Shown piece after piece: positions 18,549-41,523 of a DNA stretch of 64,000 nt; the stretch's first letter is position 1, and every line of letters starts with the position of its first letter. The DNA comes from Hydrolagus colliei (taxonomy: Eukaryota). Below the pieces are notes generated by a model that searched no databases, had not been told where the DNA came from, and worked only from the letters and a program-made list of their open reading frames with translations. The translations under genes were made by a program, and so were the position numbers. The DNA lies in assembly GCA_035084275.1 (NCBI GenBank), contig CM068779.1, forward strand, positions 1,550,001 through 1,614,000, read 5' to 3'.

Positions 18549-18680
18549 CGGGATCTCTTGCAGAATACCAACACTTTGCGTAGACGCCAACAGCAATGAG
18601 GAGAATGAGGGTCACAAACAATATAACACCTAGACTGATTGCTGCAATGGTCCCTGTCTGATCCTGAGGTGAAGTAAATT
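18549..18680 (-). CDS. Transmembrane exon (EFTSPQDQTGTIAAISLGVILFVTLILLIAVGVYAKCWYSARDP)
   Basis: tttttcctctccag acceptor, g|gtaact donor, 132 nt phase 1-1, ~23-aa hydrophobic span. Confidence 0.9.
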
Positions 18681-19015: not shown

Positions 19016-19273
19016 CTGTCACACTGAAGTCCACACTGGTGTTGATGAATTTGCCAGTCACTTTGTTGTGAGCCAAACATATGTATTTCCCACTCTGGTT
19101 CCAATTAATGTTAGCGATAGTATGCGCAGGTCCTGTGTCTAACACAGTGTTCCCTCTGCACCATTTATACTCCGCAGCAGGGCTGGATGCCACAGAACAA
19201 TACAGGATAATAGTTTGCCCCAAGAAAGCTGTCACTGGGCTAGGGGGCATAATGATGGAATTTTCTGGTCCAT
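19016..19273 (-). CDS. CEACAM-type IgC2 B domain exon (B2)
   Basis: YGPENSIIMPPS...LYCSVASSPAAEYKW...GKYICLAHN; 258 nt phase 1-1. Confidence 0.92.
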
Positions 19274-19646
19274 CTGTGTAGGACATAAGAAGAGAGAAGC
19301 GGATTATTGACAACTTTAAACATCAACGTTTAAAATAAATGATCCAAATGTTTTATTAAATAGTAATCCTTATATTTGATATAGTGCCTGATCATGTCTT
19401 CAAGATGTCTCAAAGTGCTTCACACAATAAACTGAAGGTGCATCGACTGTTTTGTTGGAAAAATGCGGCAGCCAATTGCACACTGCAGTGTCCCACACAC
19501 AATTGTGGATTGAAGTGCCTCATGTACTATTATTTCTATTGTTGCCCTGGGCAAAGCGATCCGCCCATCGACCAACCACTGGGAACCTACTTACTGGTAG
19601 GTAAACAGAGGCATGTGGGATATTGAAACTTGCCAAATTGATGTGG

Positions 19647-19920
19647 AGTCCTGTAGTTCAGCGGTTAGTGACTCACTTCGCAAGCAATAGGACCTGGGTT
19701 CAATTCCCAACTAGAGCAAAACCTTAGACAGGTTTCCTTACTGCACGTACACACCATGGACATGCAGTCAGCGTAGGCAGGGTAGGCAGTGCCTACTTGT
19801 GAAAATATTTACTCGCCCACAAATATATACAGTCAATTCACTTTACAGTATATTGTGTGAAGCGCTTTGGGATGTCAATAAGATGTGAAAAGCGCTATAT
19901 CAAATGCAAGGATTATTATT
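19647..19920 (+). mobile_element. tRNA-derived SINE with Deu-like core and L2-type tail (abundant young family)
   Basis: A-box tagttcagcggttag, B-box gggttcaattcc, tail agcgcttt..aaagcgctatatcaaatgcaagg(att)n; other copies 18052-18320, 28862-29155(-), 32718-33040, 54030-54310. Confidence 0.85.
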
Positions 19921-19942
19921 ACACACAGCCGTTTGTACTTAC

Positions 19943-20218
19943 AGACAACCTCGATGTTGAATGTGGATGTCTCATTGCTGACAGGGTTTTGAACCAAACA
20001 GCGGTAATCCCCAGAGTCCTTTCTGTTCACCAGCGTTATGGTCAAGGTATCATTGTTGGGAGATACGAGAATCCGCCCGTTGCTCTCGAGAGCTTGGTTA
20101 TCTTTGTACCACACTCGGGAGTAAATGAGGCCAGAGGCGTCACAAGTCAGGGACACACTCTCAGTACCTTCCATTGGGTTTGAAGAGTTGCCCAGAACTC
20201 TGATATTGGAGATTTGTT
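19943..20218 (-). CDS. CEACAM-type IgC2 A domain exon (A2)
   Basis: EQISNIRVLGNSSNPMEGTESVSLTC...W.KDN...NDTLTI..VNRKDSGDYRCLVQNPVS; 276 nt phase 1-1. Confidence 0.92.
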
Positions 20219-20757
20219 CTGCAAATAAGTAAAAAGAAAAGGCAAGTCTTTTGCGGAACTCCTCAGGAGTAGTGGTTAGATCACTCGCCTCTCAAGCCAG
20301 AGGACCTGGGTTTGATTCCCAGGCATATTCACCCACAAATATACAGTCAATTCACTTTCCAGTTTATTCCATGCACAAAAATTGCGTAGCTTGCCGTTGA
20401 CCCTTCTTGCTGCTTGTCAAGCTAGGACCCCCCTATCCCGATAGTTAGGGCAAGAATAACAACAACCAACAAAATTAGATTTGTATAGCGCCTTTCATGT
20501 CACGAGGACGTCGCAAGACCTGAGCTGGGGATTGTGTGAGGGTAAGGGTGGAGGACAGCGGGGATGAACTGAATGGAATTAATCCTTGCCCACAGTGACT
20601 GGTCTACCCTTCCAGGACGAGCTGATGAGCCAGACTGGGCTGTACTGTCAAATAAAGAAGTGAAAATGACATTAAAAGAATTACTATTTGATACATTATT
20701 ATCATGACTTACCGAAAGATAAGGTCTAGATTGTACCTAGTTAGTATCATCACTTAC

Positions 20758-21021
20758 CTATAACTTGGATTTCACTGGTCGCCTCATTATACATTAGTGT
20801 TATATTGTTATATGCCTGACAAGTGTAATTTCCAGCGTTGATCATAGAAATATTACTGATGGTAATTTGTGAATAGGGTTGTTGAAGAGAGGAACTATTG
20901 AAAAACCACTGAAATTCAGAGACTGGATTGGAGACAGTGGAACACTTCAAATCAAAGCTTGCTCCCAAACCGTGAACTGTTCGATCTGGGACGATGGATA
21001 GAATGGGTATTTCTGGTCCAT
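20758..21021 (-). CDS. CEACAM-type IgC2 B domain exon (B1)
   Basis: YGPEIPILS...LKCSTVSNPVSEFQWFFN...NAGNYTCQAYN; 264 nt phase 1-1. Confidence 0.92.
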
Positions 21022-22059
21022 CTGGAACAAACAAAATAATAGTCTGTCTCACAAGTCTAGACCTAAAGGCTTAAGTAGAACATCAACACTTGTGTTGTGT
21101 CTGTCACACAAACTCTTAACAATGAGGAGCTCCCCTCAGTATCCTTAACCCCCATCACACCAGCTCTAGCCAGGCTCTATCACACACACTAAACTCTCTC
21201 CCACATCATCCCAGCCCCCGCCAGGCTCCACTGGCTCCCTATCACACAATAAACTCTGTACCCCATGACACCAGGCTCCCAATCACACACTAATCTCCAT
21301 ACCCCCATCAACCCAGCCCACACCAATCTCCACTGGCTCCCAATTTCTGAACGGATCGACTTCAGGATCGATCCTCTCTCGTTTTCAAATCACTGTGTGC
21401 CTGGTACCTCCCTACCTATCGAACTTGCTCAGCTCCCACTCCACCAACCGCTGCCTCCACTCAGCTGTCTCAGGCCCGTGTTCGTTCCCAGACTCTCCTC
21501 TCCACCATCGCTGGCCGTACCTTCAGACACTACACCCCCAAACTCTGGACTCTCGTCCCTCAATCCCTTTGCCTTGCCCCCTCCTTCTCCTCTGTTGTTA
21601 ACTGTCAGCTCAAATTCCTTGGGCAGGTAAGAGAGTGGAAGGTGAGCAGGTTGGGGGTGGTAGGGAGGTGTCTGGTCGTGAAGTGATTTGCCGGGGAGTG
21701 TGAGGAGCTTGGAAGCAGGAAGCAATTTTTCACACAAAAGGGGTTTAGTGGAACTTTCTCTCTCTTCCAAAAGACTGCGAGTTAGGGCTAGATCCAATTC
21801 ACAGACTCAAGAAGGAGGTGGATAGATGTTTGTTAGGTCAGGGTATCAAAGAATGTGGGGCAAAGGTGGCTAATTGGAGTTGAGATATATAGATCAGCCA
21901 TGATCTAATAGAATAGTGGGACAGGCTTGAGGGGCTGAATGGCCTCCTTCTCTATGTTTCTGTGAAACAATTTGTTCAGCACCAACGAAGCTTGGCAGGA
22001 CTTGGAGGTGATCGATGTGTGCTGTGTGATCCAGCTTTGGTGACACAGGAGGTAGAGTT

Positions 22060-22310
22060 TAGAATCAGGTGGACTTTGTGTAGGGGTAGTGAATGTATGG
22101 AATTCTTTACCCCAAAGGGATGTTATTGCTCAGTCCTTGAACATATTCAAGACTGAGTTAGATAGATTTCTCATTTATAAAGGGATTAAGGGGTATGGGG
22201 ATAAGGCAGGTAGCTGGAGTTAGAGTAGAACATCAGCCATGATTGAATGGCGGGGCAGGCTCGATGGGCTGAATGGCCTACTCCTGCTCCTACTTCTTAT
22301 GTTCTTATGT
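22060..22310 (+). mobile_element. CR1 3' fragment
   Basis: gatgggctgaatggcctactcctgctcctacttcttatgttcttatg tail; similar fragments ~530-680, 10010-10330, 11720-12080, 21790-21960. Confidence 0.8.
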
Positions 22311-22495
22311 TATGTGAAGCCAAGCGACTGGTGACGCGGGCATTGCAGAAATCAAGGCGGGAGGTGGTGCAGTGTGGAGAAGGGTTACACCAGCGAGGTG
22401 AGGTGTGTGGTGTGATTGCAAACATGGCTTTAACCATAGCCAAGCTTACCGCGATCACATTATATATAATTGAAGCTGCTCACAGTGATACTTAC

Positions 22496-22774
22496 AGTTC
22501 ACATTCAGAACAAATGGACTGCTTGTGCTGTCACTAACAGCGTTGAAGACATGGCAAGTGTACATCCCACTGTCAGACCTCAAAACTCCAACTAGGGTTA
22601 GTGTTTTGTTATCCAGACTTAAACTAATCCTGTCGTCGTAGATTATCGTTTTATTATCCTTAAACCACTCGTATACAGCATCCATTTGCAGTGCAGTGCA
22701 GGTCAGCAACACAGTGTCATTGTATTCAACCGGGGCAGGTTTACTGGAGACAATGGTAATGTTGGAAACAGTTT
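22496..22774 (-). CDS. CEACAM-type IgC2 A domain exon (A1)
   Basis: ETVSNITIVSSKPAPVEYNDTVLLTC...YEWFKDN...DNKTLTLVGVLRSDSGMYTCHVFNAVS...LNVN; 279 nt phase 1-1. Confidence 0.93.
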
Positions 22775-23781
22775 CTGTTAAAACACAGGAAAGTATTTGG
22801 ATTATGTATATTAAACAGCAGTTTGAAACTCAAGTCATCTGACGATACTTCTTATTTCACCCCATAATCCTGTCGATTCACTTTACAGTGTATTCCGTGA
22901 AGTGCTTTGAGACATTTGAGACGCGATAAAGGTACGATATCAAATGCGTAAATGTTATGTTACGTTTCTGGAAAGAAAACATATCTATTGCTTATGTGGC
23001 CCCCCACCCCCTTCCTCAATTGTGTAGCTCAGCGGATGGAGTCCTGTAGCTCTGTGGTTAGAGCACTCACCTCGCAAACAAGAGGACTCAGCGAAATGCT
23101 CTGACGCACTCCAGAATCGCTTGCGAATGCTCTAACTGCTGAGCTGTAGGACTCGATAGTAGAGCTGAACTGGGGCGAGAAGGTTAACGTGAAGGCAGCC
23201 ACAGGTGAAGTGGAAAGTCTTAAGGTGATGTGAAGGCGTAATGAGGCAAGGTGAAGCAGGCAGTGCCAGAGGTTCAGGGAGAGTGTGGGTGGAGGCATGA
23301 CCACCAATTGTAGAGAGGTGAGGTTGAGAGACGTTAAATAACTGAAGACTGGACGGAGGCAGCCAAGCGAAATGGGAAGGTAGAGGATTTGGGTGTAACC
23401 AGGTAATAAGGAAGTCAAATGAGATTATAATTAGCTAAGTCCTCGTCAGCCAGGATCCTTTCACGATTTTAAACTTAAATTTAAAACGTCCCGTTTGTTG
23501 GCCTTCTCAACACCTCCCTCCATAGGCTGCAGATCATCCAGATCTCTGCAGAACCATGTTCTCTCCCACACTAAGCACCGTGATCCCATCTCCCCCATTT
23601 TCACCTGACTCCATTGGCTCCCCATCACCCAGAGGATTCAATTCAAGATCCAGGTCCTCACCTTCAAAGCCCTCCATGGACTTGTCCTGCAAACTCCCAA
23701 CTACCGACCAACCTGACCGGGCTTTTAGCCTCTCTGCCCCACACTCTGGAACTCCATTCCACAGTTCCTATGCCTCGCTTC

Positions 23782-24018
23782 CAGCCAATTGCACCGACCT
23801 CAGTTGGAGGGTGGCGTCAGGTAATAATAATTTAATCCGCGGCGCATACTCAGCACTTGGTGTGACGACTGTCCGAACCCAAGTGACAATTTTTTTCCCA
23901 CTAAAACTCCACCTGCCTTCAGCTGCCACACCAGAGAGTCTGACTATGAAGTCGGCCGTGCCTCCAACAGGAACATTAATGGTATCCTGTGGTAGAGTGA
24001 CGGTGATTCCCGATGTAA
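23782..24018 (-). pseudogene. Truncated divergent IgV N exon (F/G strands and donor replaced by an L2 fragment)
   Basis: VTSGITVTLPQDTINVPVGGTADF...LQLRSVQLA then L2 sequence and TAG at 23768-23770; 23-nt branch/pyrimidine segment deleted before acceptor. Confidence 0.8.
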
Positions 24019-24159
24019 CTGGAGAGCGAGGCATCGGCCGAATACACATCTACACAGTCCGTCCCTCTCTCTGGTAGGTCGGCAAGTTTTCCCTGTATCT
24101 ATGCTTAAATCATCTTCAATAAACTCCCAACTGAGAACAGGTGAGAAAGTGAGACTCAC

Positions 24160-24211
24160 CCGCACATACACAGCAACAAAGGGCAACTACCCCGAGCAGT
24201 GCTGTCTGCAT
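24160..24211 (-). CDS. Signal-peptide exon of the ITAM-bearing gene
   Basis: MQTALLGVVALCCCVCA, intact gtgagt donor. Confidence 0.8.
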
Positions 24212-25998: not shown

Positions 25999-26050
25999 AT
26001 GCAGACAGCACTACTCGGGGTAGTTGCCCTTTGCTGCTGTGTATGTGCGG
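25999..26050 (+). CDS. Signal-peptide exon, plus-strand gene
   Basis: MQTALLGVVALCCCVCA G|gtgagt. Confidence 0.88.
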
Positions 26051-26243: not shown

Positions 26244-26555
26244 TTACAGCCCAGTTCACCATCACTGTCCCACATGGTACCATTACAGTCCCTGTCGGGG
26301 GTACAGCTGAGCTTACAGTCAAAGCGTCTGGTGAGGTGGGGAGTGGTGAATGGTATTTCGGCAATGTGCTTGTTTGTCGTTGGCTTCTGTCATCAATAAG
26401 TATCTCCCCTTCTTACCAAGACCGGGCTGTGTTACTCCCCACCTGGTCTATCCAGCTAAAAGCTGTGAATTATACTGACTCTGGGGTTTACACTGTGACC
26501 ATGCTCTCACACACTGGCACCAAGGCCACAGCGACAGTCACCCTGAAAATGAAGG
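26244..26555 (+). CDS. CEACAM-like IgV N exon, type N2
   Basis: 312 nt phase 1-1; VTAQFTITVPHGT...EWYFGNVLVCRW...DSGVYTVTM...VTLKMK. Confidence 0.88.
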
Positions 26556-29500
26556 GTAAGTAACAGTTCCGTTTAACACTAACTTATGTATGTACCATTC
26601 ATTTGTGACTAACCTGGTCACCAAGTTTAGGGAGAAGATTTAAATTAACATCGTCACACAAAATAATAATAATCCTTTCATTTGATATTGCGCTGTGTCT
26701 GTGTGGGTGAGTCTGTCAGTCTCACGATCTCTCAGTTAATGATAATAATGATGATAAAGCTTGCATTTGACAAAGTGTTTTTCACGCCTTCTAGACGTCT
26801 CAAAGCGCTTCACAGAAGATGCTGTAAAGTGAATTGACTGTATGTTTGTGGGCGGAACGTGGCAGCCAATTGCGCACGGCAGCGTCCCCCACAAACAGTC
26901 GTGGGTTGAAAATGACCAATTTTATTATGGTGGGTTTTTTTGGGCGGATGAGAACTTGCCCAAGGTTTGGCTCTGAGCTGTCTGGATTCGAGAAGGATCC
27001 AACAGGAAAACAAGAGTATCAGGTTTCAGTCTGGCTGGGTTGGTGCCAAGTGAGTCAGAATGCTGTGGTCCCATTTGGGGACTTCAGCTGTTCATAGGCT
27101 GAGATGCCAATGCAGTGCTCAGCTAGATCAGCCCTTGGCCAGACATTTAACACTGTGAGCCCCTCTGCTTGTTTTAACATTTTGTGGAGGATAAATGTTA
27201 AGTATCCAGACAAATGGACAAGCGGCTCGTGATCTAATGGTTGATTTGCCTGTAATGCTTAAAGCAGAGAAATAATGTTTCTGTCGTACAGATATACAGT
27301 AATTGTGTTATTTTCCTAGTTTCTCTCTCATGTCCTGAAGGTTTTTAACAATTCTACTGGAATATAGTTCCATAATCGCATGTGGCCACTTGTATCTCCA
27401 ACAAGTAACCATTATTAGTGTTCCACAGAGCCCTCACCTCGCAAGCGAGAGGATCTGGTTTGATTCCTGGCTTGGTTTATAATTTACCAATGTCACCAGA
27501 ACGGCTAACAGTCATGAACAACAACAAAATGACACTTGTATAGCGCCTTTCACGTCAGGAGGACGTCCCAAGGCGTTGGACAGTCACTGCTTCAGACCCG
27601 AGCTGGGGTCAGGGGTGGGTGGGAAATGGGGGATAAGGAGTTGCCGATGGGACCATCGAAGAGGAGGGTCTTAAGGTGAGACTTGAAGGAGGCCAGGGAG
27701 GGGATGAAGCGGAGGGACTTCAGGATGGAGTTCCAGAGGTTGGGGGCAGAGTGGCTGAAGGCTCGCCCACCAATGGTTGGGTGGGTGGGTCGAGGAACGT
27801 GGAGCAGGCCAGAGCCTGCTGAACGGAGGGGCCGGCGAGGTTGGTAAGGGATAGAAGGTCACGGATGTAGGGGTGGGGGGGGGGGGGGGGGGGGGCGAAG
27901 TTGTGGAGGGCTTCAAATGTGAGGAACCGGATCTTGAATTGGATCTCTAGATGATGGGGAGCCAATGGAGTCGGGCGAGGATGGGGGAGATGGGGTAGTT
28001 TGGAATAACAACTTCCATTTACACAGTGCAGTACACAGAGTGCTCGGCAGTGATGAAGTCTGACCACAAGTCATGGGGGAGAGGGAGTGGGGAGCTGGCC
28101 ATTAGCAAGCTCAAACAGGGAAGGTCTTTATGGGAAGTTGAATATAGAGACACACAGGGCAGAGAGTTCCAGCGTTTTAGGGCATAGTGGCTGAAGGCAC
28201 GGCCCACTGATGGTGGAATGGAGGGGCACAAGCCACAAAAAAGGAGGCTGGAGCCAGCCGAGTGGAAGCAAGCGGGCGGTGAAGTGGGGGCTAAGCAGGT
28301 TGGGGAGGTAAGGAGGGAATCCAATGATTTGAAAACGGGTGAAGGGATGTGTAAATCAAAGTTGAAAGCACAGTCGCTAGTGTATTTGCCTTGGGTTTGA
28401 TTCCCAGGCAGGGCAAACCTTTAGACAAGTTTCCTTACTCGACACAGACTGTGTGTGGGTTCTCTGTGTCTCTGTGTTCCAGTCAGTTGCTGAGTCTCAG
28501 AGGAACCCAAAGAGGAAACAGTTTGTTTGAGGTAAAGGTGCTGTTTCTCTGTTAATAAAGATATAACTCGCAGGTCTGGGTCTTCTGGGTTCCTTAATTC
28601 CCATGTTGTTTTTGCTTTTGCTCTCGTGCTGTGACTGTCAGCAGCAGAGAGGAACAAGAGGCTGTGAGTTCAGCTCTACGCGTCCCCTGTAGTTCGACTG
28701 TTTTCCTGTATTTCTGGACAAATAATGAGATGGAGTAGGAGGCCTGGGCTTTAGTTGTTGTCTGAAAGCGCTCTGACTTCTGACCGTGGCCAACGATGGA
28801 GCAGGTAGGGCTTTGCCCCCCACATTGTGCTCTGCCTGTCCAGGGCTGTGTGTGTCTATGTGTGGAGATAATAATAATAATCCTTGCATTTGATATAGAG
28901 CTTTTCCACGTCTTCTAGACGTTTCAAATCGCTTCACAGAATATACTGTAAAGTGAGTTAACTGTATATTTGTGGGTACAATGCGGCAGCCAATTGCGCA
29001 CAGCAGCGTCCCCACAATCAGCCGTGGATTGAAATGCAATTTTAAAAAAGTGATTATTGTCAGGCGTGTGGAGTAAGGAAACTTGCCCTTGCCTGGAGTG
29101 GAACCCAGGTCCCTCACTTGTAAGGCGAGTGCTCATAACCACTGAGCTACAGGAGCTTCACAAATAGAGACTCTGCCACTCGCAATGCTGCCTTGCTGTT
29201 GGCTTCGGGAACATGGGGAGAGAGTATCCACATTGAGGCTTCACTTGATTATCTCCAAAGACTTTCCTCCAGGATAATGTTGAGTCCAACCCAGGCAGGC
29301 TTTACGTCATCGGTTAAAGGAGCGGCAGTTGATGGAACGAATGGCCTTTTCTCAATCCGTGCTTTCTTTAAAGTTATTTAGGTGAATTTATAATCTTAAA
29401 GCAATCCAGGAGAATTGACTGTATATTTGTGGGCGAAACGCGGCAGCCAAATTGCGCACAGCAGTGTCCCACAAAGAGTCACCGAAATGGGGCCAGGAGA

Positions 29501-29856: not shown

Positions 29857-30415
29857 GTGCACAATTGGCTGCCGTGTTTCGCCCACAAATATACAGTCAA
29901 TTCACTTTATAGTATATTCTGTGTAGCGCTTTGAGACATCGATAAGATGTGAAAAGCGCTGTGTCAAAATGCAAGGATTATTATTATTATTATTACCAGT
30001 GTAGAGCTCTCATAAGAGTCTCTCTTTGTCTCGATGAATTTTAACAAGATTAGTTGACGCCACTGGTGCCCGCCTACTTCTTCTCTTGGTGTTTGTTGTG
30101 AATCTCTCTCTGTCCGTTGCAACTGACAGTTTCAACTGTTTTGAGAGATCATTAACCGTTTCTATTTATTTATTTTCCTCCAGTTTTCGACTTTAAATTC
30201 TAAATATTCTAACACCGATGTGAAGGCTGGAGCAGGAGCTGTATCAATGTAAAGTTGTACTGTATTAATGTATATTATATCTTTCCTGATTTCCATGTCA
30301 CCAATTTCTTGTTGAAAGTAACATTCTGTTGACTTGAGTTTTATTTAAACTAAAGCAGAGCAGGCTGGTAACTGTTCTCCCAACATTTACATCAAATCCT
30401 TTCCTTGCTAAACAG

Positions 30416-30501
30416 GTGAAAACAATAGCAGTGTGTCCGTCCATGTTGGGCTCAATGTTGGCGTGATTCTGATCGCTTTAGTGTCACAGTTCATCTATTA
30501 A
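30416..30501 (+). CDS. GPI-signal-like terminal coding exon (GENNSSVSVHVGLNVGVILIALVSQFIY*); exon continues to donor at 30529
   Basis: tttccttgctaaacag acceptor, phase 1; leader+N+this exon = 450 nt = 149 aa + stop. Confidence 0.78.
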
Positions 30502-31690
30502 AGACATCTGTCCCTGAGAAGACAAGCTGGTAAGTTCCTGTCTATATCATTCCACATGAACCATCACAACAGACGGACAGATGTTTAGGGTTATCAAGGG
30601 TTAGTTGGTCTCGCAAATGAGTTCAATTCTCAGGCTGGGCGTGAACGATTAGGAAAGTTTCCTGCCTCCACACCCCACCCCCACACACGCCTCTATTTAC
30701 CGGCAGTCAGTAGGAACCCGCTTGTTAGTCAATAGTCAATCCCTCTTCCTCCCTGACTTTACCCCACCCCATGTTTTCCTCCCTCTTCCCCCTTTCCCTC
30801 CCTCTCCCCCGTTATTACCCTATTTTCCCCCTTTCTCCCCTGGCCCCACTTCCATGAGAGCCTTGAGTGTTGAGACGGGCCGGCCTTGAATGAGGCAGGC
30901 GAGGGAGCGAGAGGCGAAGGGATCGTGGGATGGAGTTCCAGAGTGTGGCAGCAGAGAGGGGGAGAGGGGAGAGGAGTGCAAGGCAGTGTTGGCAGAGGAG
31001 GATACGTTATGTTGTCTACACCAGGTCCCAGTCTCCAGCCTTCTCTTTGTGCAGTTACTAGACAAGAGTCTGGCAGCTTGTATCACCCACAGCGTTTCTC
31101 GGTTCAAGAACTCTGGCCGCGTAATTCTAATAATGTGTTGCTTACATGTGATATCATCCGCAGGCCTGGGGTCAACTCTATCTCTCTGCCCCCACCCTCG
31201 ACTCCAGAACCACTGCTGTCCTGACGGATTGTCTACCAGACATCAAGTCCTGGCTGAGACCTGACTTTCTCCAATTGAATGTCCACCTCAACCAATATCT
31301 CTGCCCTCAGGCACTGAAACCCTTATTCGCGCTTTCATTAAATCCAGGCTTGACTATGAGAACTCCCTTTAAAGCCCTCCATGGCCTTGCTCCTCACTAC
31401 CTCTGCCCCCTATTAAAGCTTCACCAACATGTCCTCTGCTCTGCAGACACTGACCTGCTCCACGTCCCCCTGACCTGCTCCACTATGGACAGTCGGGCCT
31501 TCAGCCTCTCTACCCCCACACCCTCTGGAGCTCCAACCCAGAGCCCTCTCCCCCTCGCCACCTTGCATGCCTCCTGCGAGGACATTTTTAAGACCCTCTC
31601 TTGCACCGTGCCTTCAGTCACCTTCCGCACACAATTACATACACACAAACACACCCCACACATACACACATACACATGCATAAGGATATA

Positions 31691-32308
31691 CAGTTAACCC
31701 TCATCGAACGCGACTTTATCGATTGTGAATTCATGTATACGCAATGAAAAAAAAGCATCACTTTTTTGTGCAGTGCGCATAAAACTAATGTATACGCGCT
31801 AGCTGGTCCCGAATGCATGCGCACTTGTGAGGACAGCAGCAGAGTTCCTGGCTAATTCCGCTGATTCCTCGGCTGGCTGGCCCTGCACGGAATGCACCCT
31901 TACGAAAGTCCGATGACCCTTCAGCCTCGGAGCATCCTGATGGCATTACATGGTAAACAGAAGAGAGAGAGAGAGATTCTCCTAACACTTCCAGGACCAA
32001 AGGTAAAATAATTCAGGCTAGCTGTAGTTTTATTGCTTTATTTTTTATTGCTTTGTGATACTATTGCTTTATTACTTGGGGGGGGGGGCGGGGGTGGCGA
32101 GGGGCAGGCCAGCCGGCTGTAGCCCGCCTCAGTACGTACCTTGCATTGGTCGGGTGTGGATGTGCCTGGAGGCCTGAGGTGGGTAGGCTGTGGCTGGATT
32201 GCCCTAACCCCCCCCTTTTCCCATCACTAGTTGAGCTTACCCAACGAGATTTTACTGAGTGCGCAGTTTTCCGGGAACGTAACTCCCGTGGTCAACGAGG
32301 GTTGACTG
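31691..32308. mobile_element. Non-autonomous Tc1/mariner-pogo (Tigger-like) DNA transposon
   Basis: TA flanks (31689-90, 32309-10); TIRs cagttaaccctc / gagggttgactg (11/12 match). Confidence 0.75.
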
Positions 32309-35300
32309 TACAGAGCAACGACATGCCATTCAGTCCAACTGGTCGATGCGGCATTAATGCTCTAAACGAGCCTTCTCCTCACGTCCTCATTAACCCTACA
32401 AGCATAACCGTCTATTGCTTCGTGTACCTATCTTGCTTCCCCTTAAATTCCCCTCAACAGTTCCCTATGGTTCCAAGTTCTATCTTCCCACTATTCTCTG
32501 CGTAAAGAAATGTCTCCTAACGTCCCTATTTGATTGACTGTATTTGTGACTGTTTTATTTGCACACACAGACATACACACACACATAGACACAAAGGAGG
32601 GGGTGGGATGCAAAACATGATCAAGATATGGGCACGACACAAACCACAGGAAAGGAGAGGGGCGCGATGAGGATGGCGGGATAGGAGGGTGTGTGACTGA
32701 GAAGACGGGATAGGAGTGGGCTGTAGCTTAGTGACTAGAGCGCTCGCCTTACAAGCGTGAGACCTGTGTTTCGAATTCAGGCAGGCCAGGGCAAAACCTT
32801 GGGCACGTTTTCTTATTCCACGTGCACACACACACACACACACACAGACAGATACACACACATGCGCCTAATAATAAAACGTCCAAAAAATACAATCATA
32901 AAATTGGTCATTTCAATCCACGACTGTTTGCGGGGGACGCTGCCGTGCGCAATTGGCTGCCGCGTTTCTCCCACAAAATATACGGTCGATTCACGTTACA
33001 GTATATTCTCTGAAGCGCTTTGAGAGGTCGATAAGACGCGAAATGCCCTAGAAACCAAGGAGCGAGACAAAGAAGATGGTAAAGGAGGGGGTGAGAAGAT
33101 GGTGCTGATGGAGGCATTTCCAAAATTTCTGTGTCTCAACACACCTCCAGGTGCAACCCACCCCCCCACACCCAACTCTCTCCCTCCCCTCCCCCCTACT
33201 GTGCGCCTCCCCCCTGCTCGGGTCCCGACCTGTCTGTCGAGGACATGCCGATGGGGAAAGGATACGATGAGTCAAAGAATATGGGGAAGTGGGGGGTGCG
33301 AAGTAGAAAATGGACAGCGGGGGGCGCGATGGAAAAGATAGAAGAGTAGAGGGAAGATGGTCCCAAGTGCATGAGGCCAATCATGGAAGACTGGAATATA
33401 GGAGGCGCGAAGCAGCAATCAGGATAGCCTTGGGCGCGATGCAGAAGATGAGATAAGAGGAGACACGGCAACAACAACAATATTACATTGATAGAGCACC
33501 TTTCACGTCGGGAGGACGTCCCAAGGAAGGAGAGTAGGAAAGAGGGAAGAGTTAGGGGAGCAGAAGGCGCGGTCACAGAGGAAGGTCTTGAAGGAGGAAA
33601 GGGAGGAAGCGAGGCGAAGGGACTGCAGGATGGAGTTCCAGAGTGTGGGAGGCAGAGAGACCCACACACGGACACAGTCACATACAGACAAATACACAGA
33701 CACTGCAGATACAGACCAACACACACACGGACACAGTCACACACAGACACACTCTGTCTCTCTCGCAGATGCAGACAGACACACAAGGCAACGATAACAA
33801 AATTACACTTGTACAGCGCCTTTCATATAAGGAGAAAATCCCAAGTCACTGTTTGAGATCTGAGCTGGAGTCAGATATGGGGAGGGGGGAGGGAAAGTAG
33901 GGTTTTTGGGGTGACTGAAGGGATCGTCGAAGAGGAGGGACCTGAGGTGCGACTTGAAGGAGGCCAGGGAGTGGGCGAGCGAGGCAGAGGGACTGAGGGA
34001 TGGAGTTCCAGTGGTTGGGGGCAGAGTGACTGAAGGCTCACCCTTTAGCCAATGGTGGGGCGGGTGGGCTGGGGGACGTGGAGCAGGCCAGAGCCTGCAG
34101 AGCGGAGGGTTAGTGGTGGTGTTAGGAAGTCACAGATGTAGGCTGGGGGCTAGGAAGTGGACGGCTTTGAATGCTGTCTGCAACCTGCCCTCAGCCTGTG
34201 TAGGGACTGGGGAGGGGTGGAGGGCAGGGCAGGGATGGGGGAGGGAGGTGTGGGGGAGGTTTAACACACCGAGCCGCGCCGACACACACCACCAATTCCA
34301 CAAAACACACAGTTACTACACTTTACGTTATTCTCTGTGAAGCACTTTGGGACACCTCAAAGACTTAGATAAGACATCACACGCGAGGATTTACTATTTA
34401 TTAGATAGTGAAAACAGAAAGTGTGGATTCTTTCAAGAACAAATTAGAGAGATTTCTGTGAGGAAATAACATCTGGGGATACAGTATACAGACACACACC
34501 CACAGTGCAGTATACAGTAAGTGTGAGCTCCTCTATATAGTTTGATATTAACAATGATACCTCTATCTAAAAATAATATCTTTGTGTAGAGCCGTATAAG
34601 TCAGGATGTTGTCCTAAGGAGCTGGACAGTTAGAGATTTGGAACTGATCTAGGGTTGGGATCGGTTGTGGGGGCGGGGTGGGTGACCAAAGGCACGGTTT
34701 GTCAAAGAGGAGGGTCTTGAGATGAATGAGGCTTGAATGAGGTGAGGGTGGGTTCGAGGCAGAGGGACTGAGGGATGGAATTCCAGAGAGTGATGGGGCA
34801 GAGAGAGAGGCTGAAAGCCCGACCTCCGATGGTGGGGCGGGTGAGGTCAGGGGTGTGAAACAGGCCAGAGCCCGCAGAGCGGAGGGACTGGTCGGGATGG
34901 TAGGGGGTTAGGAGGTCACAGAGGTAGCTTGGAGAGAGGCTGTGGCCAGACACGCAGAGAGACAGAGACACCCTGTGTACAGTTTGGGACACGACATGTC
35001 AAGCGACCAGGACAGTGGAAGGTAAACTGGAGGGATCTTCTAAATCAAATCAAATATCGCTCCTTTCACGTCGAGAGGACGTCCCAAGGCGGTGCACAGT
35101 CAGGTGGGGACAAGAGCAGGTTGGGGGGGAGAGAGCTGGAGGGACAGGATGAAGGAGAGTAGGAGAATTGGCTATATTTGTGGGCGAAACGCGGCAGCCA
35201 AATTGCGCACAGCAGCGTCCCACAAACAGTCACGGAAGTGGGGCCGGGGGGAGAACGGGTCTTTTGTTGAGCAATTTATTATACGGATATTATAATAATC

Positions 35301-38196
35301 CCAACAACAACAACTTGCACTTATACGGCGCCCTCTCACAGCGTTTGACAAAAGATTATAAGAATATAAAAACAATCCATGCAATCAACGTAACTCTTAA
35401 AAAAAACACAACTGCAAATTTTACATGTTGCTCGTGTGTGTGTATGTGCGTAATAAAATAATAAGAATGATACTTACCTTTATATAGCGATTTCCACGTC
35501 TTATCGACGTCTCAAAGCGTTTCACAGAAAACAACAACATCCCAAAGGTAGCGACAACAACAGCTTTGATTTATATAGTGCCCTCCACGCCGGACGGCGT
35601 CTGAGAGCGCTTCACAATAGCGGATCCTGGGACCGAGACAGGGGCAGGAAGGTGACCAAAGGCGCGGTCAAAGAGAAAGGTCTTTAGCCGGGACCTGAAG
35701 CTGAGAAGAGAGGGGGCGAGGCGAAGGGAGCGAGGGAGGGAGTTCCAGAGCGTTGTGGCTGAAGGCACGGCCGCCGAGGGTGAAGTGGAGGATCTCTTCC
35801 TGACGTACACACTCACACTAACAATCTCTCACACGCAGACTGACACTCACACACACACACACACACTCTGACAGCAGTGGTCCTGGAGTCGAGGGCGGGG
35901 GAATGGAAGGGTTTGCTGATCCCAGCCGTGGTGGGGAGATGAATAAGCCGCATATCAGCCCAACTCGTTTGCTGTAAGAAAGTGAGACAGTCAACATAGA
36001 CAAGCAGTAGATAGGAAGAGTTGTGCTGAAGGCACAGAGAGCAACGTTAACCTGACTTTGTATTTCACATCTGATTAACAACATCATCATAGATTGTGGT
36101 GACAGCACAGAACTGTGTCTGCGTCTGTGCTGGTGCTCGCTCCCCCACTGGAGCTCTCTACTCTCACCCCATTCCCTGTTGTGTTCTATCATGTCTGTTC
36201 TGGTGCTCTCTAAGACTCTTATCTTACTGAACAACAACAAAATTACATTTGTATAGCGTCTTTCATGTCAGGAGGATGTCCCAAGGTGTTTGACAGATAC
36301 TGCTTCAGACCCGAGCTGAGGATGGGAGGGGCGGAGGGAGGGGGGAGGGATGTGGGGGGATTAGGAGTTGCCGATAGGTCCATCAAAGAGGAGGGTCTTG
36401 AGGCGAGACTTGAAGGGGGCGAGGCAGAGGGACTTCGGGATGGAGTTTCACAGGTGTTGGAGGCAAGAGTGGCTGAAGGCTCGCCCACTAATGATTGGTT
36501 GGACGAGTGGATCGGGGGATGTGGAGCAGGCCAGAGCCTGCTGAACGGAGGGGTCGGGCAGGTTGGTAAGGGGGATAGGAGGTCACGGATGTTGTGGGTG
36601 GGGTGGGGGGCAAGGTTGTGGAGAGCTTTAAATGTGAGGACCAGGATGTTGAATTGGATCCTCTGGATGATGGGGAGCCAATGGAGTTGGGCGAGGATGG
36701 GGGGAGCTGTGGTCACGGAGTTTGGAATGGTAGAGGACACAGGCCACAGAGTTCTGGATTATCTGCAGCTCGTGGAGGGAGGAATTGGGAAGGCCAACCA
36801 GCAGGGCATTTGCATAATCAAGCCGGGATGTAATGAAGGCTTGGATGAGGGTTTCAGCGGCTTTGGAGGAGGAGTGAGGTAATGACGGAGCCGGGAAATG
36901 TTGCGGAGTTGGGGAAAGGCTGAGCGAGTTATTGCTGGGATGCAGTGGAGGAAACACAGTTGAGGGTCGAACAAGACACCTAGGTTCCTGACTGGCTTGC
37001 TGAGGTTGAATGTGCAACCATGGAGGTTGATGCCGTACTGTCAGGGATCTGCTCCTGAGCTGGGGGTTGGGATCAGGAGGGAGTGGGGGGCATGGAGGGT
37101 AGGGATAGGAGAGTGATCAAGGGTGCAGTTGGTCGAAGAGAATCATCTCCCGACACGGGAAGGAGTCGAGGGAGGAGGTCAAGGCGTAGACTGAGGCAGT
37201 GGGAGAGGGTGGGGACGGTGAGGCTGAAGGCCTGGCCATCGATGATGGGAGTGGGAGAGGCGAACGATATGAAGCAGGCTGGAGCTTGCTGAGTGGGGGG
37301 AGTTGGTTGGGGGTTAAACATCACAGGGGAAGGGAGGTCGCACATCTGAGGTTGCACTCTCAACCTCTCTAAGCCAGTCAGGAACCTGGGTGTCTAGATC
37401 GACCCTGCATTGTCCTTCCTCTCCCCACATCCGCGCCATGACCAGTACTGCCTTCCACCACCTTCTCAAATTCGCCAGACTCCGCCACTGCCTCACCCCT
37501 CAGGCCGCTGAAACCCTAGTCTACACATTTGGACCAAGCTCGACTATGGAAACTCTCCTCGTCGGCCTTCCTGGTTCTTCCCTTCACAAGCTGCAGATCA
37601 TCCAGAACTCAGCCTCTGTGCCTCCCACAATCTGGAACTCCATCCCACGGTCCCTTCTCCTCGCTCCCTCCCTCGTCTCATTCAAGGCTGGTCTGAAGAC
37701 CCACCTCTTCGACCATGCCGTCTGCAGCCCTCCCAACTCTCTCCCTCCCCTCCTAACTCTCGCCCGCCTCTGCCCCCTACCCTGCCCCTCTCCCTTGCTC
37801 GGGTCTTGACCTGACTGTTTAGCGCCATGAGACGTCCTCCCGACGTGAAAGGCTGTCTCTACAAATGTCATTTTGCTGTTGTCGTTATTTTGAGGCCATG
37901 GCGAGCCTTTTCGTTCAGGATCAGGATCCATTGACTAACAATCGGGTTCCCACTGACTGCTGGTAAACAGAGGCGTGTGTGTGGGGTGGGGGGATGTGGA
38001 GTTAGGAAGCTTTCCTGATCTTTCACGCCCAGCCTGGGAATTGAACCCACTTGCGAGGCGAATGCTCTAACCACAAGATCAACAAACAGCCAGCCAGCGA
38101 GCGAGTGAGTGAGTCGAGGTCTGGATCTAGTGTTTGTCATTAATAATAATAGTCCTTTAGGAACTTACCAGCTTGTCTTCTCAGGGACAGATGTCT

Positions 38197-38282
38197 TTAA
38201 TAGATGAACTGTGACACTAAAGCGATCAGAATCACGCCAACATTGAGCCCAACATGGACGGACGCACTGCTATTCTTTTCAT
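38197..38282 (-). CDS. Second GPI-signal-like exon (DEKNSSASVHVGLNVGVILIALVSQFIY*); exon continues to donor at 38169
   Basis: Inverted near-identical copy of 30416-30529 with intact splice sites. Confidence 0.75.
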
Positions 38283-40779
38283 CTGTTTAGCAAGGAAAGG
38301 ATTTGATGTAAACGTGGATGTAGGGAGAACAGTTACCAGCCTGTTCTGCTTTAGTTTAACTGAAACTCAAGTCAACAGAATTTTACTTTCAACAAGAAAT
38401 TGGTGTGGAGTAAGGAAACTTGCCCAAGGTTTCGCCCAGATCTGCCCGGATTCGAACATTGCTCTCACGCTTGTAAGGCGAGTTCTCTAACCACTGAGCT
38501 ACAGGAAGGAGCAGCTCAATGGAATTCAACAACAACAACAACAAAATTACATTGAAAGAGCGTCGGGAGGACGTCCCAAGGCGCTGAACAGTTATGTTGG
38601 GACCTGAGTGGGGAGGAAGGGTCGGGGTAGGGGCAGGGGGGACGGTGAGTGGGAAAGGGGGGAGAGTTAGGAGGGCAGTAGAAGGTGCGGTCGAAGAGGA
38701 AGGTCTTGAGACCAGCTCACAGTGTGGGAGCAGAGAGGCTGCAACAGGTATTTGGTAACCAACCTCTCATCATTTCTTAAACTGTTTGCCTTCACCAAAT
38801 CTTAAAGATGCTTTCCTGTAACTAGCAGTAAGTATAGGATCCAAATTATTAGTTCATTGTTGGATTACTTTTCCAGGTGTAAAAATTCATTCCAAAAATA
38901 ATAATAATAATTTGATCACTCCACAGGACAAGCTTCTCTGTCCACACACACACACATACACACACACAAACACCTCTGTCTACCCAGTACGTAGTAAGTA
39001 GGAACCAGATTGTTGGATTGCTTTTCTGGGGGTAACAATCCATTCAAAAATAACTAATAATAATAATAATTTGGTCATTCAATCCACAGATGTTTGTCGG
39101 ACGTCTCTGTGCACAATCACCCACAAAACACATACACTTTACAGCATGTTCTATAAAGCGCTTTGAGACGTTGTGAAGACATGATAAGGCCTTTTATTAT
39201 AATCTATTCTATGATCATTCCCAATTCACATCTGTTGAGATTGATTGTCATACATTATAGCCATAGATTATAGAAAAATTAAACACACCAATAATGATAC
39301 AGTTCACCCGAGTGTAAATTAATATTCTTGGTGATGATTCATGATTTGAACAAAATGATTGTAACTCAATGAGCCCAACATTAGCCCATGGTCTGGGCTG
39401 ACACACCATTGCAGTGTTGGGGAGTTGCACAATTATCAGAGTTCCTAAATATCTGGATTAAACTACAGACTGCTCTGTCTGTCCAGATGGAATTTAAAAA
39501 TCCCACAGCACTGTTTAGAAAGAGAAGGGAATTTCTCTGGTGTCCCAACCAAGAATCCCCCAAATAAAATTGGTCTCTTGATTCATGCTGTTTGCAGATG
39601 TCACTGTTTTCAAAGTGGCTGGCATATGGCATATAAATTTCACCCACAAATATACAGTCAATTCACTTTACAATGAAGCGCTTTGAGACATCGATTAGAT
39701 GTGAAAAACTCTATATCAAAATACTAGGAGTATTTTTTTTAGAAATATACAGCAACCACACTTTACAATAAATCCTATGAAGCATTGTGAAATGTCTCAA
39801 TGACTTGATAAGACATATAAAATGCAAGGATTATTTAGTGTATCATAAGGACAACACAGGCCAAATGGTCTCCTTCTGTGCTGTAATATTCTATGATCCA
39901 GTAATGTTCTTTGAACAGTAAATAGAATGGACAAATAGGAAACTGTGCTTTTTAATAATAATGCTTGCATTTGATACAGCACCTAATGACATTGTTGTGA
40001 CTTCTCAAAGCACACCATGGAGTAAATAGCTTGGGTATTTTATAATAATCCGTCCAAAAAAACACACAATACTGTAATAAAAATTGGACATTTCAATCCA
40101 TGACTGTTTGTGGGACACTGCTGTGTGCAATTGGCTAACGGGTTTCACCACAAATGTACAGTCAATTCACGTTACAGTATATTTTGTGAAGCGCTTTAGA
40201 TGTCGATACGTTGTGAAAATGCTATATCAAATACAAGGATTATTCTTCTTATTTTGTGGGTGAAACACAGCAGCCAATTGCGCACAGCAGTGTCCAACAA
40301 ACTTTCAAGGATTGATTTGGAGGCAATCACCAACAAGTGGGTTCCTATTTACTGCTAGGTAAACAGTGGTGTTTATGTGTAATAAGAACATTTACCTAAG
40401 GTATCCCCTCACCCAGAAATCAAAACCATGTTCTCGAACTTGTCAAATCGCAAATAATGGTACTTATTAAAGATATGTGGCCACATGTGCCAAAAGCACT
40501 AGATTTCACTACTATAATTAAATGCCTTTGAGAGAGAAACTAGGAAAATAACTCATACTGTACTGTATATCGATATGGCAGAAACATTATTTCTCTACTT
40601 TAAGCAGCTGAATGACATGAAATTGAACCATCAGATCATGAGCAGCTCATCCAGTTGTCTGGATATAAAACATTTTGTTTGAACATGAGTCTGCTCCCTA
40701 AACATGGTGACCAGGTCAGTGACAAACATGAATGGCACATAGATAGGTTATTGTTAAATAGAACTGTTACTGTACTTAC

Positions 40780-41094
40780 CCAGCACTGTCGGGGTGATTT
40801 TCGCTGATGCCTTTTGGTTAGTGGCTGAGGTCATGCTTACTGTGTACTCTCCAGCGTCATTATAATTCACAGATGTTAGCTGGAGAGACCAAGTGGGGAG
40901 TAACACAGCCCGGTCTTGGTAAATCGGGTTTACACTTCCACCTCCAGCTGGAAACGAGTCAACAACAATCACAGTCCCGAAACTCCGGTCACCACTCCTC
41001 ACCTCACCAGACGGTTTCACTGTAAGCTCACCTTTACCTCCGACAGGGGCTTTAATGGGATTGTGTGGGACAGTGATGGTGAACTGGGCTGTAA
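40780..41094 (-). pseudogene. Decayed N1 exon lacking its leader
   Basis: Acceptor AG>AA (41095-96), W>R, W>S and L>P changes, leader region deleted at ~41190. Confidence 0.8.
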
Positions 41095-41523
41095 TTGGAG
41101 AGAGAGAAGATCACATTAACGACAGCGAGGCATCGGCTGCATACACATCTACACAGTCCGTCCTGACTGATGCCCTCCTCTCTCTCTCTATCAGCAACCC
41201 ACTGTTTGTGGGGGACGCTGCCGCAGTCGGCTGCCGCGTTCCGCCCACAAACGTACAGTCTTTTCACTCTACAGTATATTCTGTGAAGCGCTTTTGAGAC
41301 GTCTGGAAGGCGTGAAAAGCTCTTCATCAAATGCGAGGATTATCATTGCTATAATTAACTGAGAGCTCGTGAGATAGACAGACTCACCCACACAGACACA
41401 GCGCAATATCAAATGAAAGGAGCATTATTATTATTTTGTGTGACGATGTTAATTTAAATCTTCTACCTAAACTTGGTGACCAGCTTAGTGTTAAATGGAA
41501 CAGTTACTTACCATTCACTTTCA

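What the first reader, a model, noticed from the sequence alone, without database searches (positions are those of the whole stretch)
30416..30529. Transmembrane exon converted to a GPI signal by one stop codon, convergent with primate CEACAMs
The exon reads GENNSSVSVHVGLNVGVILIALVSQFIY-TAA-RHLSLRRQA-G|gt. Beyond the stop the frame stays open, is basic like a stop-transfer, and ends at a phase-1 donor (114 nt, phase 1-1), as a TM exon would. The NSS omega candidate lies 23-24 aa from the end. Primate CEACAM5/6/7/8 are known to have gained GPI anchors by truncating a TM exon, so this would be an independent origin. A second copy at 38169-38282 keeps the same stop. Product: a 149-aa single-V GPI protein.
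Basis: partly seen in the sequence, partly recalled or inferred. Interest (0 to 1): 0.85.

Follow-up and report, generated by a model that had tools for sequence, protein, structure and literature searches.

The report
Truncated membrane exon, CEACAM-like gene
A chimaera-type fish genome carries a small immune-receptor-like gene whose membrane-anchor exon is cut short by a stop codon, so the protein may be lipid (GPI) anchored, as has evolved repeatedly in the same gene family in monkeys and pigs; this is plausible but unproven, and the gene may instead be a decaying copy.

Summary
Positions 30416-30529 (+) form a 114-nt, phase 1-1 exon (AG acceptor, perfect GTAAGT donor). It splices in frame behind a leader exon (25999-26050) and an Ig V exon (26244-26555) to give a 149-aa protein ending at TAA 30499-30501.

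The second copy (38282-38169) lies on the opposite strand. It sits in a 243-nt block that is about 96% identical to copy A (8 substitutions and one 6-nt indel), so its shared stop is not independent evidence.

The family is CEACAM-like, and the window is holocephalan-like. The closest protein is Callorhinchus milii "CEACAM4-like", built as V + TM + ITIM tail.

Supporting a GPI signal:
- NSS/NNS/SVS candidate omega triads lie 22-25 residues from the end.
- The hydrophobic tail is much weaker than the family's TM segments.
- The exon class matches the neighbouring paralog's TM exon.

Not supporting it:
- No TM-type homolog with a sense codon at the TAA position was found.
- No relics of cytoplasmic exons and no conserved downstream exon were found.
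- There is no expression evidence.
- The surrounding cluster shows decay.

[quoted passage not shown] At best this is a new member of a known kind. Interest is modest.

The parts
25999..26050 (+). Gene A leader exon (ATG; MQTALLGVVALCCCVCA + 1 nt; phase-1 donor g|gtgagt)
   Evidence: the same leader is found at four other V cassettes in the window and is near-identical to the C. milii P0001 leader
26244..26555 (+). Gene A Ig V-set exon (312 nt, phase 1-1). It lacks the canonical Cys pair (V at both positions).
   Evidence: Pfam V-set E = 9e-5; pLDDT about 90 over residues 30-120; IgV fold
30416..30529 (+). The exon of the finding: linker GENNSSVSVH, hydrophobic VGLNVGVILIALVSQFIY, TAA, RHLSLRRQA, split G. 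114 nt, phase 1-1, donor GTAAGT.
30499..30501 (+). In-frame TAA stop, 28 nt upstream of the donor
30299..30541 (+). Block about 96% identical to copy B (8 substitutions, one 6-nt indel): 117 nt of upstream intron, the exon, and 12 nt after the donor. The last 99 nt are identical. Similarity collapses right after.
38169..38282 (-). Copy B of the exon (DEKNSSASVHVGLNVGVILIALVSQFIY, TAA at 38199-38197, same post-stop sequence and donor)
40780..41088 (-). V exon upstream of copy B (V_B). ORF intact, first acceptor AG lost (ccaattacag). Closest to the V exons at 7111-6806 and 52705-52403.
41388..41425 (-). Degenerate leader-like remnant upstream of V_B (MLLSFDIALCLC, a D in the hydrophobic core, donor out of phase)
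   Evidence: read directly from the sequence

Best explanation
Positions 30416-30529 are the membrane-anchor exon of a small CEACAM-like gene (leader, one Ig V domain, this exon) in a holocephalan-type genome. The exon belongs to the same class as the family's transmembrane exons, but an in-frame TAA ends the protein exactly at the end of a short, weakly hydrophobic segment, leaving no cytoplasmic residue. Such a C-terminus is the usual substrate of the GPI transamidase. It has small residues N-S-S / N-N-S / S-V-S 22-25 residues from the end, a short spacer, and an uncharged hydrophobic tail. The most likely product is therefore a GPI-anchored single V domain of about 106-108 residues, Thy-1-like in architecture, plausibly a sheddable or decoy-type partner of the ITIM-bearing CEACAM-like receptors encoded next to it.

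Shown: exon anatomy, the spliced ORF, family assignment, the weak hydrophobicity, the duplication pattern.
Inferred: that the exon descends from a TM exon, that the gene is expressed, and that the product is GPI-anchored.
For: - Exon anatomy and the 149-aa ORF.
- The exon-like signal is rare in the window.
- Family: best hit is C. milii 'CEACAM4-like' P0001, 52% identity, built V + TM + tail with SEYSNL and NVYENI motifs. 175 phmmer hits are dominated by chondrichthyan CEACAM-like proteins with TM + YENIP/SVYSEL tails.
- Same exon class as the paralog gene C's TM exon at 18680-18549: 132 nt, phase 1-1, with Y followed by 10 codons and then a split G, as here.
- Best 19-mer Hessa sum is +3.5 kcal/mol, against a family TM mean of -2.3 (sd 2.4).
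- Candidate omega triads and an uncharged 25-26-aa C-terminus are present in both copies. The tail falls in the range of recalled GPI control sequences.
- AlphaFold models a confident V domain, while residues 125-149 are unstructured and low-confidence rather than a TM helix.
- All five related V exons keep open frames with dN/dS of 0.84 or higher, as in pathogen-facing CEACAM N domains (PMC11646289).
- The stop lies 28 nt before the donor, so by the 50-55-nt rule (established knowledge) a single downstream splice would not trigger nonsense-mediated decay.
- Precedent: a stop in the TM exon gives a GPI anchor in primates and in pig CEACAM60, the latter verified with PI-PLC (PMC2832619, PMC13212111).
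Against: - There is no transcript evidence.
- No dedicated GPI predictor or experiment was available.
- No homolog of the exon was found in any protein of the 5.8-billion-sequence database or in the four C. milii loci, about 130 kb.
- Peptide similarity to the family's TM segments is no better than for a shuffled query.
- No cytoplasmic-exon relic and no conserved second block lies downstream.
- The first canonical poly(A) hexamer is about 840 nt downstream for copy A and about 2.9 kb for copy B.
- The partner copy B lacks a usable leader, and a nearby C2 exon is broken, so the cluster contains dead parts.
- dN/dS near or above 1 is also what neutral decay gives.
Confidence: 0.4

Rival explanations
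1. Decaying gene fragment. An inverted duplication with a breakpoint just past the TM exon left two V + TM units without cytoplasmic exons. The TAA is then a neutral nonsense mutation, copied between the two arms by gene conversion, in units that are not expressed or not functional.
For: - No cytoplasmic exons or relics lie between the copies.
- Similarity between the copies ends 12 nt past the donor.
- Copy B has only a degenerate, out-of-phase leader.
- The C2 exon at 43850-43477 is broken by an insertion.
- The V exons are mosaic relative to the exon copies: V_A versus V_B dS is 0.23, while the exon copies differ by 2.6%.
- dN/dS is about 1.
- The protein is absent from all databases.
Against: - Gene A has an intact ATG leader, intact splice sites at all three exons and an open V exon.
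- All five related V exons are open despite dS up to 0.27.
- The hydrophobic segment is specifically short and weak and carries small-residue triads at the right distance. A random nonsense mutation in a normal TM would not produce this.
- The last 99 nt of the conserved block carry no change, while the remaining 144 nt carry 8 substitutions and an indel. This is a weak signal, p about 0.02-0.04 by my Poisson estimate.
Confidence: 0.35
2. The product is expressed but not GPI-anchored. It would be either a tail-less type I membrane protein held by the 18-22-residue hydrophobic end, or a secreted, shed or ER-degraded single V domain.
For: - Pig CEACAM62 is described as spanning the membrane with a stop near the end of its TM, and terrapin single-domain tail-less CEACAM1-like genes are proposed as decoys (PMC13212111, PMC13278318).
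- VSVHVGLNVGVILIALVSQFIY is 22 uncharged residues.
Against: - The Hessa sum is +3.5 to +4.1 for 19-21-mers, which predicts poor stable insertion.
- There is no flanking basic anchor.
- Good omega-type triads are present.
Confidence: 0.13
3. It is a GPI-signal exon that was never a TM exon. It would then be an old lineage of single-V GPI-linked CEACAM-like genes, and the post-stop 'stop-transfer' sequence is coincidence.
For: - There is no detectable TM homolog.
- The post-stop open frame is not significant.
- C. milii XP_042197916.1 (P0044, 155 aa) is another single-V protein ending in a weak hydrophobic tail...SVSVSVLTAAALVSTLSVQLLSGSN, with a Hessa sum of +3.1.
- Xenopus has a conserved single-IgV Ceacam predicted to be GPI-linked (PMC5112662).
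Against: - A perfect GTAAGT donor in phase 1 sits 28 nt after the stop.
- The distance from the Y to the exon end, 10 codons, equals that of gene C's TM exon.
- The post-stop peptide is enriched in basic residues, p = 0.043.
- The C-terminal exon of P0044 could not be retrieved for comparison.
Confidence: 0.12

Closest known systems
Primate GPI-linked CEACAM5/6/7/8
   Same: Same type of family (a V-type N domain without the disulfide, with ITIM-bearing paralogs). The membrane exon is cut by a stop so that a hydrophobic C-terminus without a tail remains. Genes lie in palindromic arrangement with gene conversion (PMC2832619, PMC11646289).
   Different: In primates the GPI exon is clearly alignable to the CEACAM1 TM exon, the changes are defined (a deletion plus a stop), and anchorage is experimentally shown. 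Here no alignable TM parent was found and nothing has been tested. Those proteins also carry C2-type domains; this one has a single V domain.
Porcine CEACAM60
   Same: A single substitution created a TAA in the TM exon, and PI-PLC showed GPI anchorage. This is an independent, non-primate origin (PMC13212111).
   Different: CEACAM60 keeps a recognisable first cytoplasmic exon with a degenerate donor. Here no cytoplasmic relic is found and the donor after the stop is perfect.
Xenopus single-IgV Ceacam predicted to be GPI-linked (and the zebrafish CEACAM predicted to be GPI-anchored)
   Same: A non-mammalian CEACAM-family member with a single V domain and a predicted GPI anchor (PMC5112662; zebrafish as cited in PMC13212111).
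   Different: The Xenopus gene has a conserved ortholog pair with dN/dS of 0.18-0.2. Here dN/dS is about 1 or higher and no ortholog is known.
Terrapin CEACAM1-derived single-domain, tail-less genes (proposed decoys)
   Same: A single N domain plus a membrane exon, cytoplasmic exons excluded, and orientation opposite to the CEACAM1-like gene (PMC13278318). Gene A here lies head-to-head with the CEACAM1-like gene C.
   Different: In terrapins the cause is a donor mutation with read-through, and the proteins are predicted to be TM-anchored. Here it is an in-exon stop with an intact donor. V_A is only about 38% identical to gene C's V domain, so it is not a close mimic.
Callorhinchus milii XP_042197916.1 (P0044)
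   Same: A 155-aa protein with one related V domain (38% identity) and a weakly hydrophobic C-terminus with an SVSVSV motif.
   Different: The similarity of the tails is not significant, and its last exon could not be fetched. It is a computed gene model with no known function.
Thy-1 (CD90)
   Same: Architecture only: one V-type Ig domain attached almost directly to a GPI anchor (from my own knowledge, not tested here).
   Different: No specific sequence relationship, and Thy-1 keeps its disulfides.

Membership tests
CEACAM (CEACAM1-related) family | N-terminal IgV-like domain lacking the canonical intradomain disulfide | tested here: met
   Pfam V-set hit. In the alignment to JAM-A the two Cys positions are V in this protein: 'ltvkas' versus 'lsCays', and 'ytvtm' versus 'ytC-m'. 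The model is a confident IgV fold.
CEACAM (CEACAM1-related) family | Closest annotated relatives are CEACAMs | tested here: met
   P0001 'CEACAM4-like' and P0012 'CEACAM1-like' of C. milii (52-54% identity); ray and shark 'CEACAM1-like' and 'PSG22-like' proteins. These names are automated annotation.
CEACAM (CEACAM1-related) family | Clustered with paralogs that have a V domain, IgC2 domains, a TM and an ITIM/ITSM tail | tested here: met
   Gene C on the minus strand, 24211 to about 14500: V, four C2 exons, a TM exon and Tyr-motif exons. The P0001 tail carries SEYSNL and NVYENI.
CEACAM (CEACAM1-related) family | Solved CEACAM N domains are the best sequence or structure match | tested here: inconclusive
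   PDB phmmer: JAM-A 8e-5, ahead of CEACAM6/8/5 at 0.06-0.7. Foldseek: TIGIT and PD-L1 first, CEACAM1/5/6/8 N domains at ranks 36-50 with similar E-values.
CEACAM (CEACAM1-related) family | Synteny with the vertebrate CEACAM locus (flanking genes) | not testable with these tools
   No non-CEACAM gene was recognised in the window, and the rest of the genome is not available.
GPI-anchored proteins (C-terminal attachment signal) | N-terminal signal peptide | tested here: met
   MQTALLGVVALCCCVCA on its own leader exon, read directly. No SignalP was available.
GPI-anchored proteins (C-terminal attachment signal) | Small omega and omega+2 residues 17-32 residues from the end, followed by a short spacer | tested here: met
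   Copy A has NNS, NSS and SVS; copy B has NSS, SSA and SAS. 22-25 residues would be removed. This is a rule-based check only.
GPI-anchored proteins (C-terminal attachment signal) | Moderately hydrophobic C-terminal tail with no cytoplasmic residues | tested here: met
   The protein ends at Y149 directly after VGLNVGVILIALVSQFIY. The Hessa sum is far above the family's TM segments and in the range of recalled GPI controls.
GPI-anchored proteins (C-terminal attachment signal) | Positive score from a trained predictor, and PI-PLC or transamidase dependence | not testable with these tools
   NetGPI, big-PI and PredGPI are not installed, and no experiment is possible.
TM-exon-derived GPI signals (CEACAM5/6/7/8, CEACAM60 type) | The GPI exon is alignable to a TM exon of a paralog that has a sense codon at the stop position | tested here: not met
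   - Peptide against 155 family proteins: top score 40, shuffled-query null maximum 38.4 +/- 3.5.
- DNA against gene C's TM exon is not significant (44/300 shuffles); against P0001's TM exon there is only an 18-nt match, reached by 4/300 shuffles.
- No hit in the C. milii loci or in the word search.
- Low power: gene C's and P0001's TM exons are also not alignable to each other.
TM-exon-derived GPI signals (CEACAM5/6/7/8, CEACAM60 type) | Same exon position, phase and layout as a TM exon of the family, with the donor kept after the stop | tested here: met
   The exon follows the V exon and is phase 1-1 like gene C's TM exon (132 nt). Ten codons lie between the terminal Y and the split G in both. 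The donor is GTAAGT. P0001's TM exon is phase 1-2, so the match is to one of two exon classes.
TM-exon-derived GPI signals (CEACAM5/6/7/8, CEACAM60 type) | Relics of cytoplasmic exons downstream | tested here: not met
   tblastn with P0001's tail, blastn with the C. milii cytoplasmic exons and tblastn with all family hits shorter than 1000 aa find nothing in 30530-38168 except interspersed repeats.

The most novel reading that the evidence does not exclude
A cartilaginous-fish (holocephalan) CEACAM-like gene independently switched from transmembrane to GPI anchorage by truncating its TM exon, and it is kept as a convergent pair homogenised by gene conversion. This would push the recurrent 'GPI-linked decoy next to an ITIM receptor' solution back to the deepest jawed-vertebrate lineage that has CEACAMs.
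Probability: 0.3. Interest if true: 0.45.

Novelty: new member of a known kind. Interest (0 to 1): 0.3.

Why it matters
If real, this would be the first candidate GPI-linked CEACAM-like protein I know of in a cartilaginous fish. It would be one more independent case of a switch already documented in Old World monkeys, New World monkeys and pigs, and predicted in frogs and zebrafish. That would strengthen the view that TM-to-GPI conversion is an easy, repeatedly selected route to sheddable decoy receptors in this fast-evolving family. It would not open a new question, and without transcript or biochemical data it remains a prediction.

Tried and rejected
1. Looked for a TM-type homolog of the exon:
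- tblastn and blastn within the window find only the two copies.
- Smith-Waterman of the pre-stop peptide against 155 family proteins scores no better than a shuffled query. An attractive by-eye match to P0049 (SVGLVVGV...FLYKRR against HVGLNVGV...FIY*RH) is therefore not evidence.
- DNA alignment to gene C's TM exon is not significant. Against C. milii P0001's TM exon only an 18-nt match appears, reached by 4 of 300 shuffles, which I do not count as homology. The two bona fide TM exons do not align to each other either.
- A word search restricted to the exon peptide, with a long concatenated query to admit 300-960-aa proteins, gave 9 candidates and none with E <= 10. I set the region to 506-545 of 550, so the last 5 residues were not used.
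- Four C. milii loci, about 130 kb, hold no match to 30299-30541.

2. Looked for cytoplasmic or 3' exons between the copies and found none.

3. Tried to fetch the gene of P0044, the possible GPI-type analog. The locus returned holds only its leader exon.

4. Family assignment by solved structures is generic IgV and not CEACAM-specific.

5. ARAGORN on 30000-39000 finds no tRNA. Calling the flanking repeats tRNA-derived SINEs rests only on my reading of the sequence.

6. The pre-stop and post-stop pieces were treated apart, and the N runs were left alone.

Full report
**What is there.** The window is vertebrate, repeat-rich DNA. Kilobase stretches of non-coding sequence align at 75-80% to a Callorhinchus milii (elephant shark) contig, and the best protein matches are C. 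milii proteins. The source is therefore a holocephalan, but not an annotated C. milii locus.

The acceptor is ...ccttgctaaacag|GT. The exon encodes (G)ENNSSVSVHVGLNVGVILIALVSQFIY, then TAA (30499-30501), then RHLSLRRQA, then G|gtaagt. It is 114 nt and phase 1-1.

About 3.9 kb upstream on the same strand lie a leader exon (25999-26050, MQTALLGVVALCCCVCA, phase-1 donor) and an Ig V exon (26244-26555, phase 1-1). Joined, the three exons give a 149-aa ORF.

When a pyrimidine-rich acceptor and a consensus donor are required, only four hydrophobic phase 1-1 exon-like segments exist on both strands of the 64 kb, and two of them are this exon and its copy. The exon-like character is therefore not chance.

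**The second copy.** The copy at 38169-38282 is the reverse complement. The two exons face each other 7.6 kb apart.
- They differ at three positions, all non-synonymous and all in the first 27 nt (G/D, N/K, V/A).
- From there through the stop, the post-stop codons, the donor and 12 more bases they are identical. Similarity then collapses.
- The conserved block (30299-30541: 117 nt of intron, the exon, and 12 nt) carries 8 substitutions and one 6-nt indel, about 96% identity (94-97% for the two ungapped segments). The V-exon regions of the two units are only about 81% identical.
- Synonymous divergence between V_A and V_B is 0.23. V_B is instead nearly identical to two other V exons, at 7111-6806 and 52705-52403 (dS 0.01-0.05).

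The units are mosaics, and the exon block was duplicated or converted recently. The shared TAA shows that the stop predates that event. It is not independent retention. Palindromic gene arrangement with gene conversion is a described feature of primate CEACAM loci (PMC11646289).

**Family.**
- Pfam gives a sub-threshold V-set hit.
- The word-indexed search finds one relative, C. milii 'CEACAM4-like' (P0001, 239 aa, 52% identity, near-identical leader). It is built as V + TM + a tail with SEYSNL and NVYENI motifs.
- Exhaustive phmmer finds 175 hits. The named ones are shark, ray and chimaera proteins called 'CEACAM1-like', 'PSG22-like' or uncharacterized. Nearly all have the TM consensus ..GAIAGIVIG....WLIKRK and YENIP/SVYSEL tails.
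- The V domain has valines at both canonical cysteine positions (alignment), as CEACAM N domains do.
- Against solved structures the domain is a generic IgV. JAM-A is the best hit by sequence, TIGIT and PD-L1 by fold, and CEACAM N domains rank slightly lower.
- CEACAM homologs in cartilaginous fish are in the literature (PMC3628338, PMC5112662, PMC13278318).

I file it as CEACAM-like. Orthology to mammalian CEACAMs was not tested.

**Context in the window.** There are six related V exons.

Gene C lies head-to-head with gene A on the minus strand. It is a complete CEACAM1-like gene:
- leader at 24211 and V exon at 24022-23777;
- four C2 exons;
- a TM exon at 18680-18549;
- tyrosine-motif exons at about 16418-16362 and 14590-14546.

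It corresponds to C. milii P0089.

On the minus strand beyond copy B lie V_B, which has only a degenerate, out-of-phase leader remnant, a C2 exon broken by an insertion with a frameshift and a stop, and two further leader + V cassettes. The cluster is therefore a birth-and-death array with dead parts. All five closely related V exons are nevertheless open, with dN/dS from 0.84 to above 1. This fits either diversifying selection, as for pathogen-facing CEACAM N domains (PMC11646289), or neutrality.

**Is it a former TM exon?** The evidence is architectural, not sequence similarity.
- Gene C's TM exon is also phase 1-1 (132 nt). It has the same layout: about 10 linker residues, the hydrophobic segment ending in Y, ten more codons, then a split G codon. 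In the exon of the finding the first of those ten codons is the TAA.
- The C. milii ortholog reads ...VVYRKRRHSAGDP|G at that place.
- The post-stop peptide has 4 basic residues in 9, p = 0.043 given an open frame. The open frame itself is uninformative, p = 0.68.
- A perfect GTAAGT donor is kept.

Against this, neither peptide nor DNA comparison detects convincing similarity to any TM exon, and no homolog turned up in the C. milii loci or the databases. The test has little power, though, because gene C's and P0001's genuine TM exons do not align to each other either, and C. milii is the only holocephalan named among the hits I looked up.

No relic of cytoplasmic exons and no second conserved block lies between the copies.

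**Would the product be GPI-anchored?**
- The protein ends directly after VGLNVGVILIALVSQFIY.
- The best 19-mer has a position-independent Hessa sum of +3.5 kcal/mol, against -2.3 +/- 2.4 for 23 family TM segments. The only comparable family member is C. milii P0044 (+3.1), itself a 155-aa single-V protein ending in a weak hydrophobic tail.
- Small-residue triads (NNS, NSS and SVS in copy A; NSS, SSA and SAS in copy B) lie 22-25 residues from the end, followed by a short spacer.
- AlphaFold gives no helix and low confidence for residues 125-149.

By the established four-part model of GPI signals this is a fair candidate. A hydrophobic C-terminus with no cytoplasmic residue is the classic transamidase substrate. 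Because the segment is both shorter and weaker than a TM, more than one mutation would separate it from a TM ancestor, as with the 'mutation package' in primates (PMC2832619). No trained predictor and no experiment was available.

[quoted passage not shown] Pig CEACAM60 owes its TAA to a single T-to-A change and was shown to be PI-PLC sensitive (PMC13212111). Xenopus has a conserved single-IgV Ceacam predicted to be GPI-linked (PMC5112662), and a zebrafish member is predicted to be GPI-anchored (cited in PMC13212111). Terrapins have tail-less single-domain CEACAM1-like genes in opposite orientation to CEACAM1, proposed as decoys (PMC13278318). The present case, if functional, is another member of this recurrent kind in a new lineage.

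**Verdict.** My estimates:
- 0.40: a real exon giving a GPI-type C-terminus, most likely TM-derived.
- 0.35: a decaying duplicate fragment.
- 0.13: expressed but not GPI-anchored.
- 0.12: a GPI exon that was never a TM exon.

Interest is modest (0.3).

Noticed in passing
window 14500-24211, minus strand: A complete multi-domain CEACAM1-like gene (gene C), head-to-head with gene A and corresponding to C. milii P0089. Parts: leader at 24211, V exon 24022-23777, four C2 exons (22784-22500, 21037-20759, 20270-19935, 19292-19002), TM exon 18680-18549 (132 nt, phase 1-1), and tyrosine-motif exons at about 16418-16362 and 14590-14546 (PDYSSL).
   Followed up: partly
window 43477-43850, minus strand: A C2-type Ig exon is broken by a short SINE-like insertion that causes a frameshift and an in-frame stop. 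It is a pseudo-exon inside the V6/V5/V_B array.
   Followed up: partly
window V exons 55170-54859, 52705-52403, 41088-40780, 26244-26555, 7111-6806: Five closely related V exons are all open. Pairwise dN/dS runs from 0.84 to 1.95, and reaches 7.2 for V1 versus V_B (about 1 synonymous change by my estimate from dS = 0.013). This fits diversifying selection or recent neutral divergence. The V exon and membrane-exon genealogies disagree, so the units are mosaics.
   Followed up: partly
window 26600-26755 and 41339-41497: A leader-like remnant (..SFDIALC.., followed by gtgagt) lies downstream of gene A's V exon and upstream of V_B. This indicates that the array grew by tandem duplication of leader + V cassettes.
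   Followed up: no
window 30605-30688, 37979-38062, 38405-38504: SINE-like repeats with a tRNA T-arm-like motif flank both exon copies. ARAGORN finds no intact tRNA there. One of them marks the upstream edge of the conserved block in copy B.
   Followed up: partly
C. milii XP_042197916.1 (P0044); locus L002 10001-10052: A 155-aa predicted protein with one related V domain and a weakly hydrophobic C-terminus (...SVSVSVLTAAALVSTLSVQLLSGSN). It may be a second GPI-type member in holocephalans. Only its 52-nt leader exon could be retrieved.
   Followed up: partly
window 31630-32730: About 1.1 kb of unique, non-repeated sequence lies between the two exon copies, with no match in the window or in the C. 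milii loci. No coding signal was recognised.
   Followed up: no
window 60234-63458: Four N runs (1386 N in total) are interspersed with (TG/CA)-rich low-complexity sequence.
   Followed up: no
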